Positions 26,883 to 35,875 of a stretch of 64,000 nucleotides of DNA are shown here, piece by piece. Position numbers and translations under genes: made by a program. The stretch is taken from positions 124,001 through 188,000 of IMG/VR virus record IMGVR_UViG_3300027541_000009. One strand, given 5' to 3'. Within the stretch, counting starts at the first letter, position 1. Each line of letters opens with the position of its first letter. Under the pieces are notes generated by a model. The model did not search any database. It was not told where the DNA came from and saw only the letters and a program-made list of their open reading frames with translations.

Positions 26883-26934
26883 GGTAAACAAATGTTACGG
26901 AACGCAACGTTCCCTTAACATTGTTAGACACCCG

Positions 26935-27032
26935 ATAACCGAGACCTATGGGTGTATAAATTACGTCTCTCATATCCCCGCTAAGGGTGCGGGGAGCATA
27001 GTATCTCCACCATTTCCCTGATGGTCTTACTA
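26935..27032 (+). ncRNA. PhotoRC-II-like structured psbA leader RNA
   Basis: GAGAC/GTCTC pairing, CCCCGC-TAAGGGT-GCGGGG hairpin and CCAT/ATGG hairpin directly 5' of a phage psbA; similarity to the motif is recalled, not searched. Confidence 0.6.
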
Positions 27033-33753: not shown

Positions 33754-33962
33754 GCGCAGGATTTGGTGGTCAAGGAAAAGAAAATAGAATTGGTAAAGAT
33801 GCCAAAATTACTATTGACTTAGATAATATAGACATAGTTTTAAAACAATATAAGAAAATTAAAAAATATAAGAAATCATCTCTGTATGCTATCAAAACAA
33901 TGGATGGCACAGAAGATATTGTGAGTTCATTAATTAAAGAAGCAGAGGAGAATCCGTTGTAA
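33750..33962 (+). CDS. Hypothetical protein
   Basis: ATGA overlap; operon position. Confidence 0.6.
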   Translation: MSAGFGGQGKENRIGKDAKITIDLDNIDIVLKQYKKIKKYKKSSLYAIKTMDGTEDIVSSLIKEAEENPL

Positions 33963-34288
33963 TGGGGAAGCATTACCTACTTAATTTGTATGGATGCTCG
34001 TTTGTCCTTTTGGACGACGAGCGTTGTCTTATAGACTTATTGGAAAACGCGGCAGCAGCGAGCGGCGCTACTGTGGTTCAAACAATTTCAAAAAAGTTTG
34101 AACCACAAGGAGTTACTGTAATATGCTTGTTGTCCGAAAGTCACATCAGCATTCATACATGGCCAGAAGAAGGTAAGGCAGCAGTTGATGTTTATACTTG
34201 TGGTGATTGTAATCCAAAGATTGGATGTGATATTATTATCCAACAACTTTATGCTACCAATCATACATTAAGTTATATTGAGAGATAG
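33962..34288 (+). CDS. speD: S-adenosylmethionine decarboxylase proenzyme
   Basis: GKHY, FEPQGVT, LSESHISIHTWPE, DVYTCG. Confidence 0.95.
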   Translation: MGKHYLLNLYGCSFVLLDDERCLIDLLENAAAASGATVVQTISKKFEPQGVTVICLLSESHISIHTWPEEGKAAVDVYTCGDCNPKIGCDIIIQQLYATNHTLSYIER

Positions 34289-34309: not shown

Positions 34310-34356
34310 CACAAAACTTCCTATATAAGTTGAATAGAGGTATAATAATCCTCTAC

Positions 34357-34661
34357 CGTTCATCCTATGACTAAAGCACTCTTGCTTTTAGCATGGGTTC
34401 CTTTCCTCTTCGTTTCAGCGCCACAAGCATCTAGCATCCAACAGGTTGCAGTTTCTTGCGACACCGCGATGGAACTAATGGACATCGTTAAAAACGACGA
34501 TGTAGTAATTCAAAAGATAGAGGACCGATTGTTATTAGAACTCCGAAAGGATTTCATAGTAAAGTGCTAAAACCTAATAGGACGGAAGTAAGCCGACGCG
34601 GAACGCAATTCGTTCATTCGCTATTCGCAAATAGCGAACGGAAACGCCGACTGAAGGAACG
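34357..34661 (+). ncRNA. Tandem glutamine-riboswitch-like (glnA/Downstream-peptide type) RNA; first P2 loop contains an ORF
   Basis: Two CGTTC...GAACG units with GGAAGTAA and CTGAAG junction words and a repeated GCCGAC, upstream of a DUF4278-like ORF. Confidence 0.6.
34367..34570 (+). CDS. 67-aa putative exported peptide embedded in the RNA element
   Basis: ORF track; hydrophobic N-terminus; two Cys. Confidence 0.55.
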   Translation: MTKALLLLAWVPFLFVSAPQASSIQQVAVSCDTAMELMDIVKNDDVVIQKIEDRLLLELRKDFIVKC

Positions 34662-34693
34662 CTCTTTAACCTAAAAACTAAGGAGAAAACCTA

Positions 34694-34831
34694 ATGTCAA
34701 AAGTAGTTTATCGCGGTGTTGAATACGACAAGCAAAAGCGTCTTGAGTATCAACAGCAAATGATGCAACAACCCCAACAGTATAACGAAAACTATCGTGG
34801 TGTTAAGTTTGTAAAGGAGGGGCATAAGTGA
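34694..34831 (+). CDS. DUF4278-like small protein, 45 aa (not in ORF track)
   Basis: MSKVVYRGVEYD...YRGVKF (two YRGV motifs); AAGGAG RBS at 34680-34685. Confidence 0.7.
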   Translation: MSKVVYRGVEYDKQKRLEYQQQMMQQPQQYNENYRGVKFVKEGHK

Positions 34832-34929
34832 TGAAAAAACTAAACTTTCTTCAACTCATTAAAGAACAAAAACAAAAAGAAGAGAGGCGTCAAAAAGCAT
34901 CTCTTGCTACTCTGGTAGCAGCAAAATGA
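34831..34929 (+). CDS. 32-aa basic helical peptide (not in ORF track)
   Basis: MKKLNFLQLIKEQKQKEERRQKASLATLVAAK; TGATG coupling; GGAGG RBS. Confidence 0.6.
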   Translation: MKKLNFLQLIKEQKQKEERRQKASLATLVAAK

Positions 34930-34934
34930 CTTAA

Positions 34935-34972
34935 GAGGTGGACTTGACTCCACCTCTTTTTTTGTCTATAAT
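34935..34972 (+). promoter_or_regulatory. Terminator hairpin fused to a sigma70 promoter (TTGACT-17-TATAAT)
   Basis: GAGGTGGA/TCCACCTC stem plus T run; TTGACT 34944-34949, TATAAT 34967-34972. Confidence 0.75.
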
Positions 34973-34995
34973 ACCTTTGTCGAGGTTTATAAAAA

Positions 34996-35175
34996 ATGGA
35001 TAGAGAAAAACTTAAACTTATTGTCAGAAACCTTGAGTCTCTGGTAGATTGTTTAAAAGCAGAGATTGAACCTGAGACTGAGGTTAAAGATCCTGTCTAT
35101 GAAGAAATTAAAAATTTTTTAAGTGACTACGACGAAGTATTTTATGACGAGGAAGATGAATACGATGTACGATGA
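34996..35175 (+). CDS. Hypothetical acidic 59-aa protein (not in ORF track)
   Basis: MDREKLKLIVRNLESLVDCLKAEI...; GAGG RBS. Confidence 0.65.
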   Translation: MDREKLKLIVRNLESLVDCLKAEIEPETEVKDPVYEEIKNFLSDYDEVFYDEEDEYDVR

Positions 35176-35875
35176 TTTTGAGTTTATGAAACCAGAAGTA
35201 AAACTCATTAGTGTTACTCCCGATGCAGAAAAGCATATGGCATATTGTGCTCGGGTAAGTAATCCTGCTAATCAGGATAATGATAAGTTTTCTGGTCTTC
35301 TCAAGTATTGCATCCAACATCAACACTGGAGTATCTTTGAACAAGCTTCAATGACTGTTGAAATCAATACTACTCGTGGACTAGCAGCTCAGATTCTTCG
35401 CCATCGTTCATTTACATATCAAGAATTTTCGCAACGATATGCTGATACAAATCTTCTGAATAGCACTATTCCTCTGCCTGAACTGCGCCGCCAAGATACA
35501 AAGAACCGTCAGAACTCTATTGATGATATTCCCGACTATCTGAAACTGACACTGACAGAAGATATCCGCGTTCATTTTGAGCAGTCTCTACGCCTTTATA
35601 ACCGCCTTTTAGAGAAGGGTGTGGCAAAGGAGTGTGCAAGGTTTGTACTGCCCTTAGCGACGCCTACAAGACTCTATATGACCGGTTCTGTAAGGTCATG
35701 GATTCATTATATTGATCTTCGTTCTGCTCATGGTACACAGAAGGAACACATGGAAATTGCAGAACTTGTTCGTTGCATCTTTACTTGCCAGTTTCCTGCA
35801 GTGTCTGAAGCACTTGGTTGGTCTCGTGAAGGGTGTTCTGAGTGTGTTGATGCACCTTCCATCACTATTGAATAA
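35165..35875 (+). CDS. thyX: Flavin-dependent thymidylate synthase
   Basis: HWSIFEQ, RHRSFTYQEFSQRY, ECARFVLP, QKEH. Confidence 0.95.
   Translation: MYDDFEFMKPEVKLISVTPDAEKHMAYCARVSNPANQDNDKFSGLLKYCIQHQHWSIFEQASMTVEINTTRGLAAQILRHRSFTYQEFSQRYADTNLLNSTIPLPELRRQDTKNRQNSIDDIPDYLKLTLTEDIRVHFEQSLRLYNRLLEKGVAKECARFVLPLATPTRLYMTGSVRSWIHYIDLRSAHGTQKEHMEIAELVRCIFTCQFPAVSEALGWSREGCSECVDAPSITIE

What the first reader, a model, noticed from the sequence alone, without database searches (positions are those of the whole stretch)
34694..34929. Riboswitch-linked DUF4278-like peptide plus coupled basic peptide: possible phage glutamine-synthetase inactivating module
Seen: two unannotated small ORFs follow the RNA. 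One is MSKVVYRGVEYD...YRGVKF (45 aa, YRGV twice); the other is a translationally coupled 32-aa Lys/Arg-rich helix. A terminator closes the unit. Established: in cyanobacteria, glutamine riboswitches precede DUF4278-containing genes, including the GS inactivating factor gene gifB (IF17), and IFs act through basic residues. Inference: the pair could be a split IF-like system letting the phage tune host GS and nitrogen flux during infection.
Basis: partly seen in the sequence, partly recalled or inferred. Interest (0 to 1): 0.68.

Follow-up and report, generated by a model that had tools for sequence, protein, structure and literature searches.

The report
Glutamine-riboswitch two-peptide module in a cyanophage
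A cyanophage carries a small self-contained unit in which glutamine-sensing RNA controls two tiny, co-translated peptides that are copies of two host peptide families; the link to glutamine synthetase remains a guess, and one of the RNA sensors is oddly split by a gene sitting inside it.

Summary
Window 34341-34965 is one transcription unit. It holds a -10 box, two glutamine (glnA-type) aptamers, pep1 (34694-34831, 45 aa, YRGV twice), pep2 (34828/34831-34929, 32-33 aa, basic helix) and a strong terminator.

Both ORFs are under purifying selection (pN/pS 0.07 and 0.24). Pep2 is present in 79 of 80 related viral loci, always overlapping the pep1 stop.

Pep1 is a divergent, sub-threshold DUF4278 peptide. 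Pep2 has no Pfam family. It is homologous (hhalign 96%) to small Prochlorococcus/Synechococcus-type peptides that lie directly behind Glutamine-II riboswitches.

The YRG and helix modules also occur fused, in both orders. They therefore almost certainly work together.

The "split IF7/IF17" reading is only partly supported:
- Pep1 resembles the N-terminal IF17 moiety, which the literature calls dispensable for GS inactivation.
- The helix shows no similarity to real IF7/IF17 GS-binding domains.
- No binding evidence was obtained.

Unexpected extra: aptamer 1 is not truncated. It is split by a 67-aa ORF in its P2 loop, and the ORF's start codon lies in the P2 stem. This recurs in 27 of 86 related loci, with the pairing kept.

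The parts
34341..34346 (+). -10 box TATAAT of the unit's promoter. The transcript should start just before aptamer 1.
   Evidence: Read from the sequence. Relatives have GGTCTATAATGACCTTA directly before the first aptamer. The consensus scan found no full -35/-10 pair here. The start site is inferred.
34357..34368 (+). Aptamer 1, 5' half: P1 strand CGTTC (34357-34361), A, then P2 strand TCCTAT (34363-34368). The last two bases are the A and T of the ATG of the embedded ORF.
   Evidence: The same CGTTCATCCTATG is present in all 10 loci with an ORF in aptamer 1.
34367..34570 (+). Embedded ORF E1 (67 aa). It has a hydrophobic, signal-like N-terminus and two invariant Cys (C31, C67). It lies in the P2 loop of aptamer 1.
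   Evidence: The exact protein was gene-called on 47 contigs. It has no Pfam hit. The AF2 model shows two helices at low confidence, pLDDT 57. It was not found in 401 cyanobacterial genomes.
34577..34605 (+). Aptamer 1, 3' half: P2 strand ATAGGA (34577-34582), conserved core CGGAAGTAAGCCGACGCG, and P1 strand GAACG (34601-34605).
   Evidence: P2 closing pairs across 30 split aptamers average 5.40 of 6, against 0.72 when the partner strand is slid.
34609..34665 (+). Aptamer 2: an intact glutamine riboswitch aptamer of the glnA type.
   Evidence: Rfam RF01739, 34.7 bits (cut-off 35), E 1.2e-5, full-length match. Relatives score up to 53.6 bits.
34662..34685 (+). Candidate expression platform: CUCUUUA pairs with UAAGGAG and hides the pep1 Shine-Dalgarno (AAGGAG, 34680-34685).
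   Evidence: Hairpin of -7.5 kcal/mol, z -1.8. The Shine-Dalgarno is fully paired in the predicted fold of the leader in 52 of 85 loci. This is weak and inferred.
34694..34831 (+). Pep1: a 45-aa peptide with two YRG motifs joined by a Gln-rich linker. It is a divergent DUF4278.
   Evidence: phrog_5049 E 6.6e-9. 187 clusters of relatives. pN/pS 0.066.
34814..34820 (+). Shine-Dalgarno AAGGAGG for pep2, encoded inside the Lys-Glu-Gly codons of pep1.
   Evidence: Read from the sequence. The pep1 C-terminus VKEGHK is conserved.
34828..34929 (+). Pep2: a 32-aa (ATG 34831) or 33-aa (GTG 34828) basic helix peptide. Its start overlaps the pep1 stop.
   Evidence: Homologous to host peptides behind Glutamine-II riboswitches. 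The exact protein was gene-called on 81 contigs.
34933..34965 (+). Intrinsic terminator: a 10-bp stem, a 6-nt loop and a T run. It closes the unit and overlaps the promoter of the next gene (TTGACT-17-TATAAT, 34944-34972).

Best explanation
Window 34341-34965 is a self-contained phage transcription unit. It senses host glutamine and in response makes two small peptides that act together.

Two glnA-type aptamers precede pep1. Glutamine binding to the start-proximal aptamer is expected to free the pep1 Shine-Dalgarno from a short hairpin. This is an ON switch, as shown experimentally for the Synechocystis gifB and Prochlorococcus MED4 leaders.

Ribosomes that finish pep1 can start pep2 through the overlapping stop/start and pep2's own Shine-Dalgarno.

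Pep1 is a YRG-repeat, DUF4278-type peptide. Pep2 is a basic amphipathic helix peptide. They are phage versions of two separate families of "downstream peptides" that picocyanobacteria place behind their own glutamine riboswitches.

The two modules also occur fused, as YRG-then-helix and as helix-then-YRG. They therefore most likely form one functional entity that binds a host protein and imposes a "nitrogen-replete" response during infection. Glutamine synthetase is the leading candidate target, by analogy with the IF17 architecture (DUF4278 plus a basic helix). The target is not shown.

Shown here: anatomy, coding status, homologies, fusions and riboswitch association.
Inferred: the direction of the switch, the joint action and the target.
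For: Anatomy.

Coding:
- Pep2 is present in 79 of 80 loci with a fixed 4-nt overlap.
- pN/pS is 0.066 for pep1 and 0.24 for pep2, against 1.3-2.2 in the off frames.

Pep1 as DUF4278-like. Its N-terminus aligns with real IF17.

Pep2 as a host family:
- The profile hits 15 of 401 cyanobacterial genomes, all of 1.6-2.7 Mb.
- The ORFs found start with the helix.
- 11 of 11 such loci have a Glutamine-II riboswitch directly upstream, 10 of them above the Rfam cut-off.
- hhalign gives 96.4%, E 1e-9.
- NCBI names these proteins hypothetical proteins of Prochlorococcus marinus.
- The same host genomes carry 2-5 DUF4278 genes at other loci.

Fusions:
- 24 clusters of YRG-then-helix proteins.
- At least 19 representatives of helix-then-YRG proteins, and P0295, which is an in-frame pep1-pep2 fusion.
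- P0217 carries the helix plus PF14105 at 38.8 bits.
- P0275 lies at the syntenic site of another phage, before thyX and phoH.

Other:
- The helix part is predicted as a helix with pLDDT 88-95.
- ON-switch behaviour and the DUF4278 link come from PMC6212724.
- The stretch is present in 23 riverine metatranscriptome runs.
Against: - No function is known for either host peptide family.
- Aptamer 2 scores 0.3 bits below the Rfam cut-off.
- The Shine-Dalgarno hairpin is weak (z -1.8) and is predicted in only 52 of 85 leaders.
- The metatranscriptome data are contigs only and cannot show transcription, ends or level.
- For GS as the target: the helix is not similar to the IF7/IF17 GS-binding domain.
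- The DUF4278 part of IF17 is reported to be dispensable for inactivation, and IF-type GS control was previously ruled out for marine picocyanobacteria (PMC6316151).
Confidence: 0.6

Rival explanations
1. One reading: pep1 plus pep2 are a split IF7/IF17-type glutamine-synthetase inactivating factor. The basic helix plays the part of the IF7-like domain that binds GS through basic residues.
For: - The architecture matches: IF17 is DUF4278 plus a basic helix-rich C-domain, seen here in the Kovacikia orthologue behind a glnA riboswitch.
- The phage has DUF4278-like plus basic helix, also fused.
- Control by glutamine is the same.
- Pep2 has a net charge of about +6.
- Authors have proposed that Prochlorococcus DUF4278 peptides may be IF17-like (PMC6212724).
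Against: - There is no sequence similarity between the helix family and 25 real IF7/IF17 C-domains: hhalign probability 0.1-2%, hmmsearch best 1.4 bits.
- The three conserved IF7 arginines have no alignable counterpart.
- The IF17 N-terminal moiety is reported as dispensable for inactivation.
- No IF7/IF17 was found in the small genomes that carry the helix peptide.
Confidence: 0.2
2. The peptides act on something other than GS. As small basic helix proteins they might bind ribosomes, RNA, PII/NtcA-pathway proteins or transporters, tuning translation or nitrogen signalling when glutamine is high.
For: - The helix family is unrelated in sequence to IF7.
- Cyanobacteria have several small basic proteins with N-terminal helices that affect C/N metabolism through other partners, for example ribosome-associated Ssr3189 (PMC13640635) and PirA, which binds PII (listed).
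- The host family carries an extra conserved tail (..GEVTPYRRSVFEERI..) that pep2 lacks.
Against: No positive evidence points to any particular alternative target. The Ssr3189 motif (K9, R14, N15) does not match, and that gene is induced by nitrogen deprivation rather than by glutamine. The similarity was not tested by alignment.
Confidence: 0.15
3. The ORFs are regulatory leader peptides or chance ORFs. Only the act of translating them, or the RNA itself, matters, for example to control downstream thyX.
For: [quoted passage not shown] The ORFs are very short.
Against: - Purifying selection on the amino-acid sequence is strong.
- Hundreds of clusters of relatives exist.
- The modules are kept when fused or permuted.
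- A strong terminator and a separate promoter lie between pep2 and the next gene.
- Host homologues are stand-alone genes.
Confidence: 0.04

Closest known systems
IF17 (gifB) of Synechocystis-type cyanobacteria; the orthologue read here is Kovacikia minuta L102:1634-2077
   Same: It lies behind a glnA-type glutamine riboswitch. It has N-terminal YRG repeats (DUF4278) followed by a basic helical region. It is a small regulator made when glutamine is high.
   Different: IF17 is one chain of about 148 aa. Its C-domain (ARxLMxxHHxxVKNRQQ..YWxxIQGK..YDRS) is homologous to IF7 and is the part that binds GS. The phage helix shows no similarity to it. The phage version is 45 + 32 aa in two cistrons.
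IF17-like DUF4278 peptides of marine picocyanobacteria behind Glutamine-II (Downstream-peptide) riboswitches, such as PMM1846 / the Yfr6 ORF of Prochlorococcus MED4 (PMC6212724, PMC6316151)
   Same: Short YRG-repeat peptides under a glutamine ON switch, with unknown function and proposed but unproven GS regulation. Pep1 is of this kind.
   Different: Pep1 scores below the Pfam cut-off. It sits behind type-I (glnA) aptamers in tandem, and it is followed by a coupled second cistron.
Unnamed family of 33-56-aa hypothetical proteins of Prochlorococcus/Synechococcus-size genomes (for example WP_209108717.1, WP_269613225.1, KGG00450.1)
   Same: The N-terminal helix MNxLLxI+xKxxKAxRLxxAQL is homologous to pep2 (hhalign 96%). 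Every copy examined lies directly behind a Glutamine-II riboswitch.
   Different: Host copies are stand-alone genes, and most have a 20-30-aa tail that pep2 lacks. The riboswitch is type II, not type I.
S-CREM1 gp206 (48 aa, behind the annotated glnA riboswitch), S-PM2 p190/p191, S-SRM01 QPX47983/QPX47984, and phrog_5049 / phrog_545
   Same: The same module at the same genomic place, between speD and thyX/td. S-PM2 and S-SRM01 have the two-cistron form. S-CREM1 has the YRG-helix fusion.
   Different: All are annotated only as hypothetical proteins. The S-CREM1 paper annotates the riboswitch but does not discuss the peptide (PMC9964418). DSL-LC02 leaves pep2 unannotated.

Membership tests
Pfam PF14105 (DUF4278) | Whole-protein score at or above the gathering cut-off (25.3 bits) | tested here: not met
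   Window pep1 scores 18.6 bits, E 0.0024. All 26 relatives hit PF14105 as their only family, with best E 9.4e-5. The P-SSM2 homologue scores 29 bits, above the cut-off. Pep1 is best filed as a divergent branch, not a certified member.
Pfam PF14105 (DUF4278) | Repeated Y-R-G-x-x-Y/F motifs, starting within the first 10 residues | tested here: met
   YRGVEY lies at residues 6-11 and YRGVKF at 34-39. They are invariant in 26 relatives. The N-terminal 12 columns align with real IF17 (hhalign P 3.4e-5).
GS inactivating factors IF7/IF17 | An IF7-like domain (ARxLMMxHHxxIKNRQQxML...YWxxIQGK...YDRS) carrying the arginines needed for GS inactivation | tested here: not met
   Real IF7/IF17 sequences came from 30 loci. 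hhalign of the helix family against the 25 IF C-domain sequences gave probability 0.1-2%. hmmsearch over 36 proteins gave a best score of 1.4 bits.
GS inactivating factors IF7/IF17 | Binds and inactivates glutamine synthetase | not testable with these tools
   This needs biochemistry. The single complex prediction (host GS x2 plus the host 33-aa helix peptide) returned "no answer" and counts neither way.
GS inactivating factors IF7/IF17 | The gifB-type gene lies behind a glutamine riboswitch | tested here: met
   Aptamer 2 ends 32 nt before the pep1 start. The same arrangement was seen for the Kovacikia IF17 orthologue.
Rfam RF01739 (Glutamine riboswitch, glnA type) | Covariance-model score at or above the gathering score (35 bits) | tested here: inconclusive
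   Aptamer 2 scores 34.7 bits, E 1.2e-5, with a full-length match. Aptamers at the same position in relatives score 31.7-53.6 bits. P1 covaries (CGTTG/CAACG in 5 aptamers) and P2 varies widely with pairing kept.
Rfam RF01739 (Glutamine riboswitch, glnA type) | A contiguous three-stem aptamer (applied to aptamer 1) | tested here: not met
   Aptamer 1 is interrupted by about 208 nt that hold an ORF, and Rfam does not detect it. Both halves keep the conserved core, P1 and the P2 closing pairs. Ligand binding is untested.
Picocyanobacterial helix-type 'downstream peptide' family (unnamed, no Pfam) | N-terminal motif N-x-L-x-x-I-[KR]...K...[RK]-L-x-x-A-x-L, and a position directly behind a glutamine riboswitch | tested here: met
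   hhalign of host against phage gives 96.4%, E 1e-9, over 29 columns. 11 of 11 host loci have RF01704 upstream. Pep2 follows the riboswitch-controlled pep1.
Translationally coupled gene pair | Overlapping stop and start codons, with a ribosome-binding site inside the upstream ORF | tested here: met
   The sequence GTGATG at 34828-34833 holds the pep1 stop TGA and both candidate pep2 starts. AAGGAGG lies at 34814-34820. The ATGA/GTGA overlap is present in 79 of 80 loci. Actual coupling is untested.

The most novel reading that the evidence does not exclude
The unit is a glutamine toggle built on an aptamer that contains a gene. The 67-aa ORF E1 lies in the P2 loop of aptamer 1, and its start codon lies in the P2 stem. 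Glutamine-stabilised folding of the split aptamer would therefore shut E1 off, and E1 translation would keep that aptamer open. Meanwhile the downstream aptamer turns pep1/pep2 on. One metabolite would then give reciprocal control of a phage-specific Cys-pair protein and of the host-like peptide pair. Standard riboswitch annotation misses this architecture.
Probability: 0.3. Interest if true: 0.85.

Novelty: new variant of a known kind. Interest (0 to 1): 0.64.

Why it matters
Glutamine riboswitches and their DUF4278 "downstream peptides" are abundant in the ocean's main primary producers and their phages. What the peptides do is unknown, and marine picocyanobacteria lack the classical GS inactivating factors.

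This locus adds three things:
- There is a second, unannotated peptide family, the basic helix, under glutamine-riboswitch control in hosts.
- Phages unite that family with the DUF4278 type, as coupled cistrons or as fusions in either order. That is a strong hint that the two host families work as one system. It also supplies compact natural constructs (48-49 aa) for pull-downs and GS assays.
- Riboswitch aptamers can persist with a translated ORF inside a stem-loop. This raises a testable model of reciprocal control and means that current covariance-model scans undercount such switches.

Tried and rejected
- NCBIfam, PDB sequence searches and the ESM Atlas look-alike search gave no usable lead for pep1, pep2 or the fusion. 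Pfam and NCBIfam gave nothing for the host helix peptides.
- The search for homologous proteins refuses pep2 because it is under 40 aa.
- The search for related loci could not use the pep2 alignment because no conserved block was found.
- The genome-contig scan with pep1 returned only phage contigs binned into unrelated MAGs.
- tblastn of pep2 against phages found nothing, probably because of the low-complexity filter.
- A cyanobacterial plasmid hit (Kovacikia) was an ordinary DUF4278 gene without a riboswitch. It did give access to the genome and hence to real IF17.
- Complex prediction with host GS (two copies) plus the host 33-aa helix peptide returned "no answer" (score 0.00). This is not evidence either way.
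- Thermodynamic folding of the whole leader pairs the first CGUUC with the last GAACG and cannot settle the split-aptamer fold.
- Metatranscriptome contigs show 5-8 times higher unitig depth over 34477-34821 than over the flanks in three runs. I do not count this as expression, because contig depth pools related strains and possibly DNA.
- My first idea, that aptamer 1 is a truncated relic, was rejected once the 5' half was found in front of the embedded ORF.
- The idea that phrog_545 is merely a mixed profile was rejected after genuine helix-then-YRG proteins were found.
- Ames & Breaker 2011 and Garcia-Dominguez 1999 are not in the held library.

Full report
**Setting.** The window is part of an IMG/VR virus record of 99 kb, with CheckV completeness 38%. 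It comes from a T4-like cyanomyovirus.
- A PhotoRC-II RNA lies at 26916-27009.
- speD lies at 33962-34288 and thyX at 35165-35875.
- The nearest isolates are Synechococcus phages from fresh or estuarine water: DSL-LC02, S-SRM01, S-CREM1 and S-PM2.

- ORF1 (34694-34831) encodes the 45-aa peptide with YRGV twice.
- ORF2 starts at GTG 34828 or ATG 34831, both overlapping the ORF1 stop, and ends at 34929. AAGGAGG at 34814-34820 can serve as its ribosome-binding site.
- A 10-bp hairpin plus T run at 34933-34965 is a strong terminator (z -5.6). It overlaps a near-consensus promoter for the next gene.

**Both ORFs are genes.**
- Among 80 related viral loci, pep2 is open in 79, always with a 4-nt ATGA/GTGA overlap. 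It comes in three sequence subtypes that align without gaps.
- pN/pS is 0.066 for pep1 and 0.24 for pep2. The same pep2 DNA read in the other frames gives 1.3 and 2.2 and is full of stops.
- The exact pep1 and pep2 sequences were gene-called on 53 and 81 public contigs.
- The stretch occurs in 23 riverine metatranscriptome runs. These are contigs only, so they show presence, not transcription.

**The RNA.**
- Aptamer 2 (34609-34665) matches Rfam Glutamine RF01739 over its full length at 34.7 bits, against a cut-off of 35.
- Most relatives have two complete aptamers in tandem, directly after GGTCTATAATGACCTTA.
- After aptamer 2, CUCUUUA can pair with UAAGGAG and hide the pep1 Shine-Dalgarno. 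This fits the ON-switch mechanism shown for gifB and for a Prochlorococcus DUF4278 gene (PMC6212724). For this locus it is inferred.

**Pep1.**
- PF14105 (DUF4278) is its only Pfam hit. It is below the cut-off here (18.6 bits) and in all 26 relatives tested, and above it in the P-SSM2 homologue.
- PHROGs places it in phrog_5049.
- Its first 12 residues align with the N-terminus of genuine IF17.

**Pep2.** Pep2 has no Pfam, NCBIfam, PDB or Atlas lead. It is nevertheless not an orphan.
- A profile of pep2 sequences hit 15 of 401 sampled cyanobacterial genomes, all small ones of 1.6-2.7 Mb.
- The hits are 33-56-aa ORFs that begin with the same helix, such as MNNLLQIREKIKKANRLYQAQL....
- 11 of 11 of these ORFs examined lie directly behind a Glutamine-II riboswitch, 10 of them above the Rfam cut-off.
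- The profile-profile comparison gives 96.4% probability, E 1e-9.
- NCBI lists them as hypothetical proteins of Prochlorococcus marinus.
- The same genomes carry 2-5 DUF4278 genes elsewhere.

Hosts therefore have two kinds of glutamine-riboswitch peptides, encoded separately. The phage has one of each behind a single tandem switch.

**The two modules belong together.**
- S-CREM1 and 24 clusters of relatives encode a single 48-49-aa protein: a YRG motif followed by the helix.
- An exhaustive profile search found 134 representatives. At least 19 have the helix followed directly by YRG motifs. One of these, P0217, scores 38.8 bits on PF14105.
- P0295 is an in-frame fusion of a window-type pep1 N-half with the helix.
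- One helix-then-YRG gene, P0275, sits at the syntenic site of another phage, before thyX and phoH.
- AF2 models the fusion as one long helix, with pLDDT 88-95 over the pep2-like part.

**Test of the IF reading.**
- I reached a cyanobacterial genome (Kovacikia minuta) through a DUF4278 protein.
- Its four glnA riboswitches all precede DUF4278 proteins. One of them is a clear IF17 orthologue.
- With that orthologue I collected IF7 and IF17 from 104 of 301 genomes. None of the small genomes listed had one.
- The helix family, phage or host, shows no similarity to the IF7-type domain: hhalign 0.1-2%, hmmsearch at most 1.4 bits.
- The literature states that the DUF4278 moiety of IF17 is dispensable for GS inactivation, and that the C-terminal arginines and lysine matter (PMC6316151).
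- So the unit resembles IF17 in architecture and control, but it is not a member of the IF family. GS remains a candidate target only. A complex prediction gave no answer.

**The split aptamer.** What looked like a truncated first aptamer is a split one.
- CGTTCATCCTAT (34357-34368) lies directly after the -10 box.
- The ATG of a 67-aa ORF (34367-34570) overlaps the last two bases of that stretch.
- ATAGGA plus the conserved core and GAACG follow at 34577-34605.
- Of 86 loci, 27 carry such an ORF in aptamer 1, in aptamer 2 or in both.
- The two ORF families, E1 (67-69 aa, with a signal-like N-terminus) and E2 (49-55 aa, with its stop inside the aptamer core), are paralogous and share two invariant Cys.
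- They were not found in 401 cyanobacterial genomes.
- Across 30 split aptamers, P1 is always complementary. The P2 closing helix keeps 5.40 of 6 pairs, against 0.72 for slid controls. For 124 intact aptamers the figures are 5.17 and 0.85.
- The helix differs between lineages: UCCUAU/AUAGGA, UCUAU/AUAGA, UCUCAU/AUGGGA, UCCCA/UGGGA.
- In locus L153 both aptamers are split, and Rfam sees neither.
- I found no description of this in the searchable literature. Two key papers were not available.
- A plausible consequence is mutual exclusion between aptamer folding and initiation on the embedded ORF. This is inference.

**Verdict.**
- The finding is real and well delimited.
- It is a phage version of the known "glutamine riboswitch plus small peptide" theme, with new features: a second peptide family, coupling and fusion of the two, and an aptamer that contains a gene.
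- The specific claim of a split GS inactivating factor is not supported by sequence and remains an open hypothesis.

Noticed in passing
window 34357-34605; also L001, L003, L004, L153 and 27 of 86 related loci: A glutamine aptamer is split by a translated-looking ORF lying in its P2 loop, with the start codon in the P2 stem. P1 and the P2 closing pairs are kept as well as in intact aptamers. ORFs occur in aptamer 1, in aptamer 2 or in both. Rfam does not detect the split copies.
   Followed up: yes
window 34367-34570 (E1); E2 for example at L001:1307-1459: A phage-specific family of small proteins with two invariant Cys about 36 residues apart. The aptamer-1 form has a hydrophobic, signal-like N-terminus. 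In the aptamer-2 form the conserved aptamer core also encodes its C-terminus, D-A-K-A-D-stop. The family has no Pfam hit and was not found in 401 cyanobacterial genomes.
   Followed up: partly
window 26916-27009: A PhotoRC-II RNA (Rfam RF01717, 84 bits), a known cyanophage cis-regulatory motif.
   Followed up: no
window 34944-35175: A near-consensus promoter (TTGACT-17-TATAAT) overlaps the terminator. It is followed by a conserved 59-aa acidic ORF (phrog_878) that recurs between the peptide module and thyX/td in S-PM2 and S-SRM01.
   Followed up: no
L088-L092 (genome contigs): Contigs carrying pep1 relatives are binned into MAGs labelled Bacteroidota, Acetobacteraceae, Poseidoniales, Rhodospirillaceae and Dehalococcoidia. 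They are most likely cyanophage contigs mis-binned into those genomes.
   Followed up: no
P0028, P0197 (pep1 relatives); P0220-P0223, P0230 (host helix peptides): Two kinds of annotation artefact. Some 45-65-aa pep1 relatives are named "tagatose-1,6-bisphosphate aldolase subunit AgaZ/GatZ" by one source. Several host gene calls run through the riboswitch DNA, giving 100-130-aa proteins whose real start is the MNTLL helix.
   Followed up: partly
L101, L104 (Kovacikia minuta genome): Besides the IF17 orthologue, two further riboswitch-controlled DUF4278 proteins have different C-terminal helical tails (..ARELVIQHRLKAERRDQSVLERFEEAIG and ..HRANLLRNLERRLQVAKERGDQNLISLLEAE..). The DUF4278-plus-variable-helix design may therefore be general.
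   Followed up: partly
window 34477-34821 in runs X2-X4: Metatranscriptome unitigs over the riboswitch and pep1 have 5-8 times the k-mer depth of the flanking genes. This could reflect high expression, or pooling of related strains that share this conserved stretch.
   Followed up: partly
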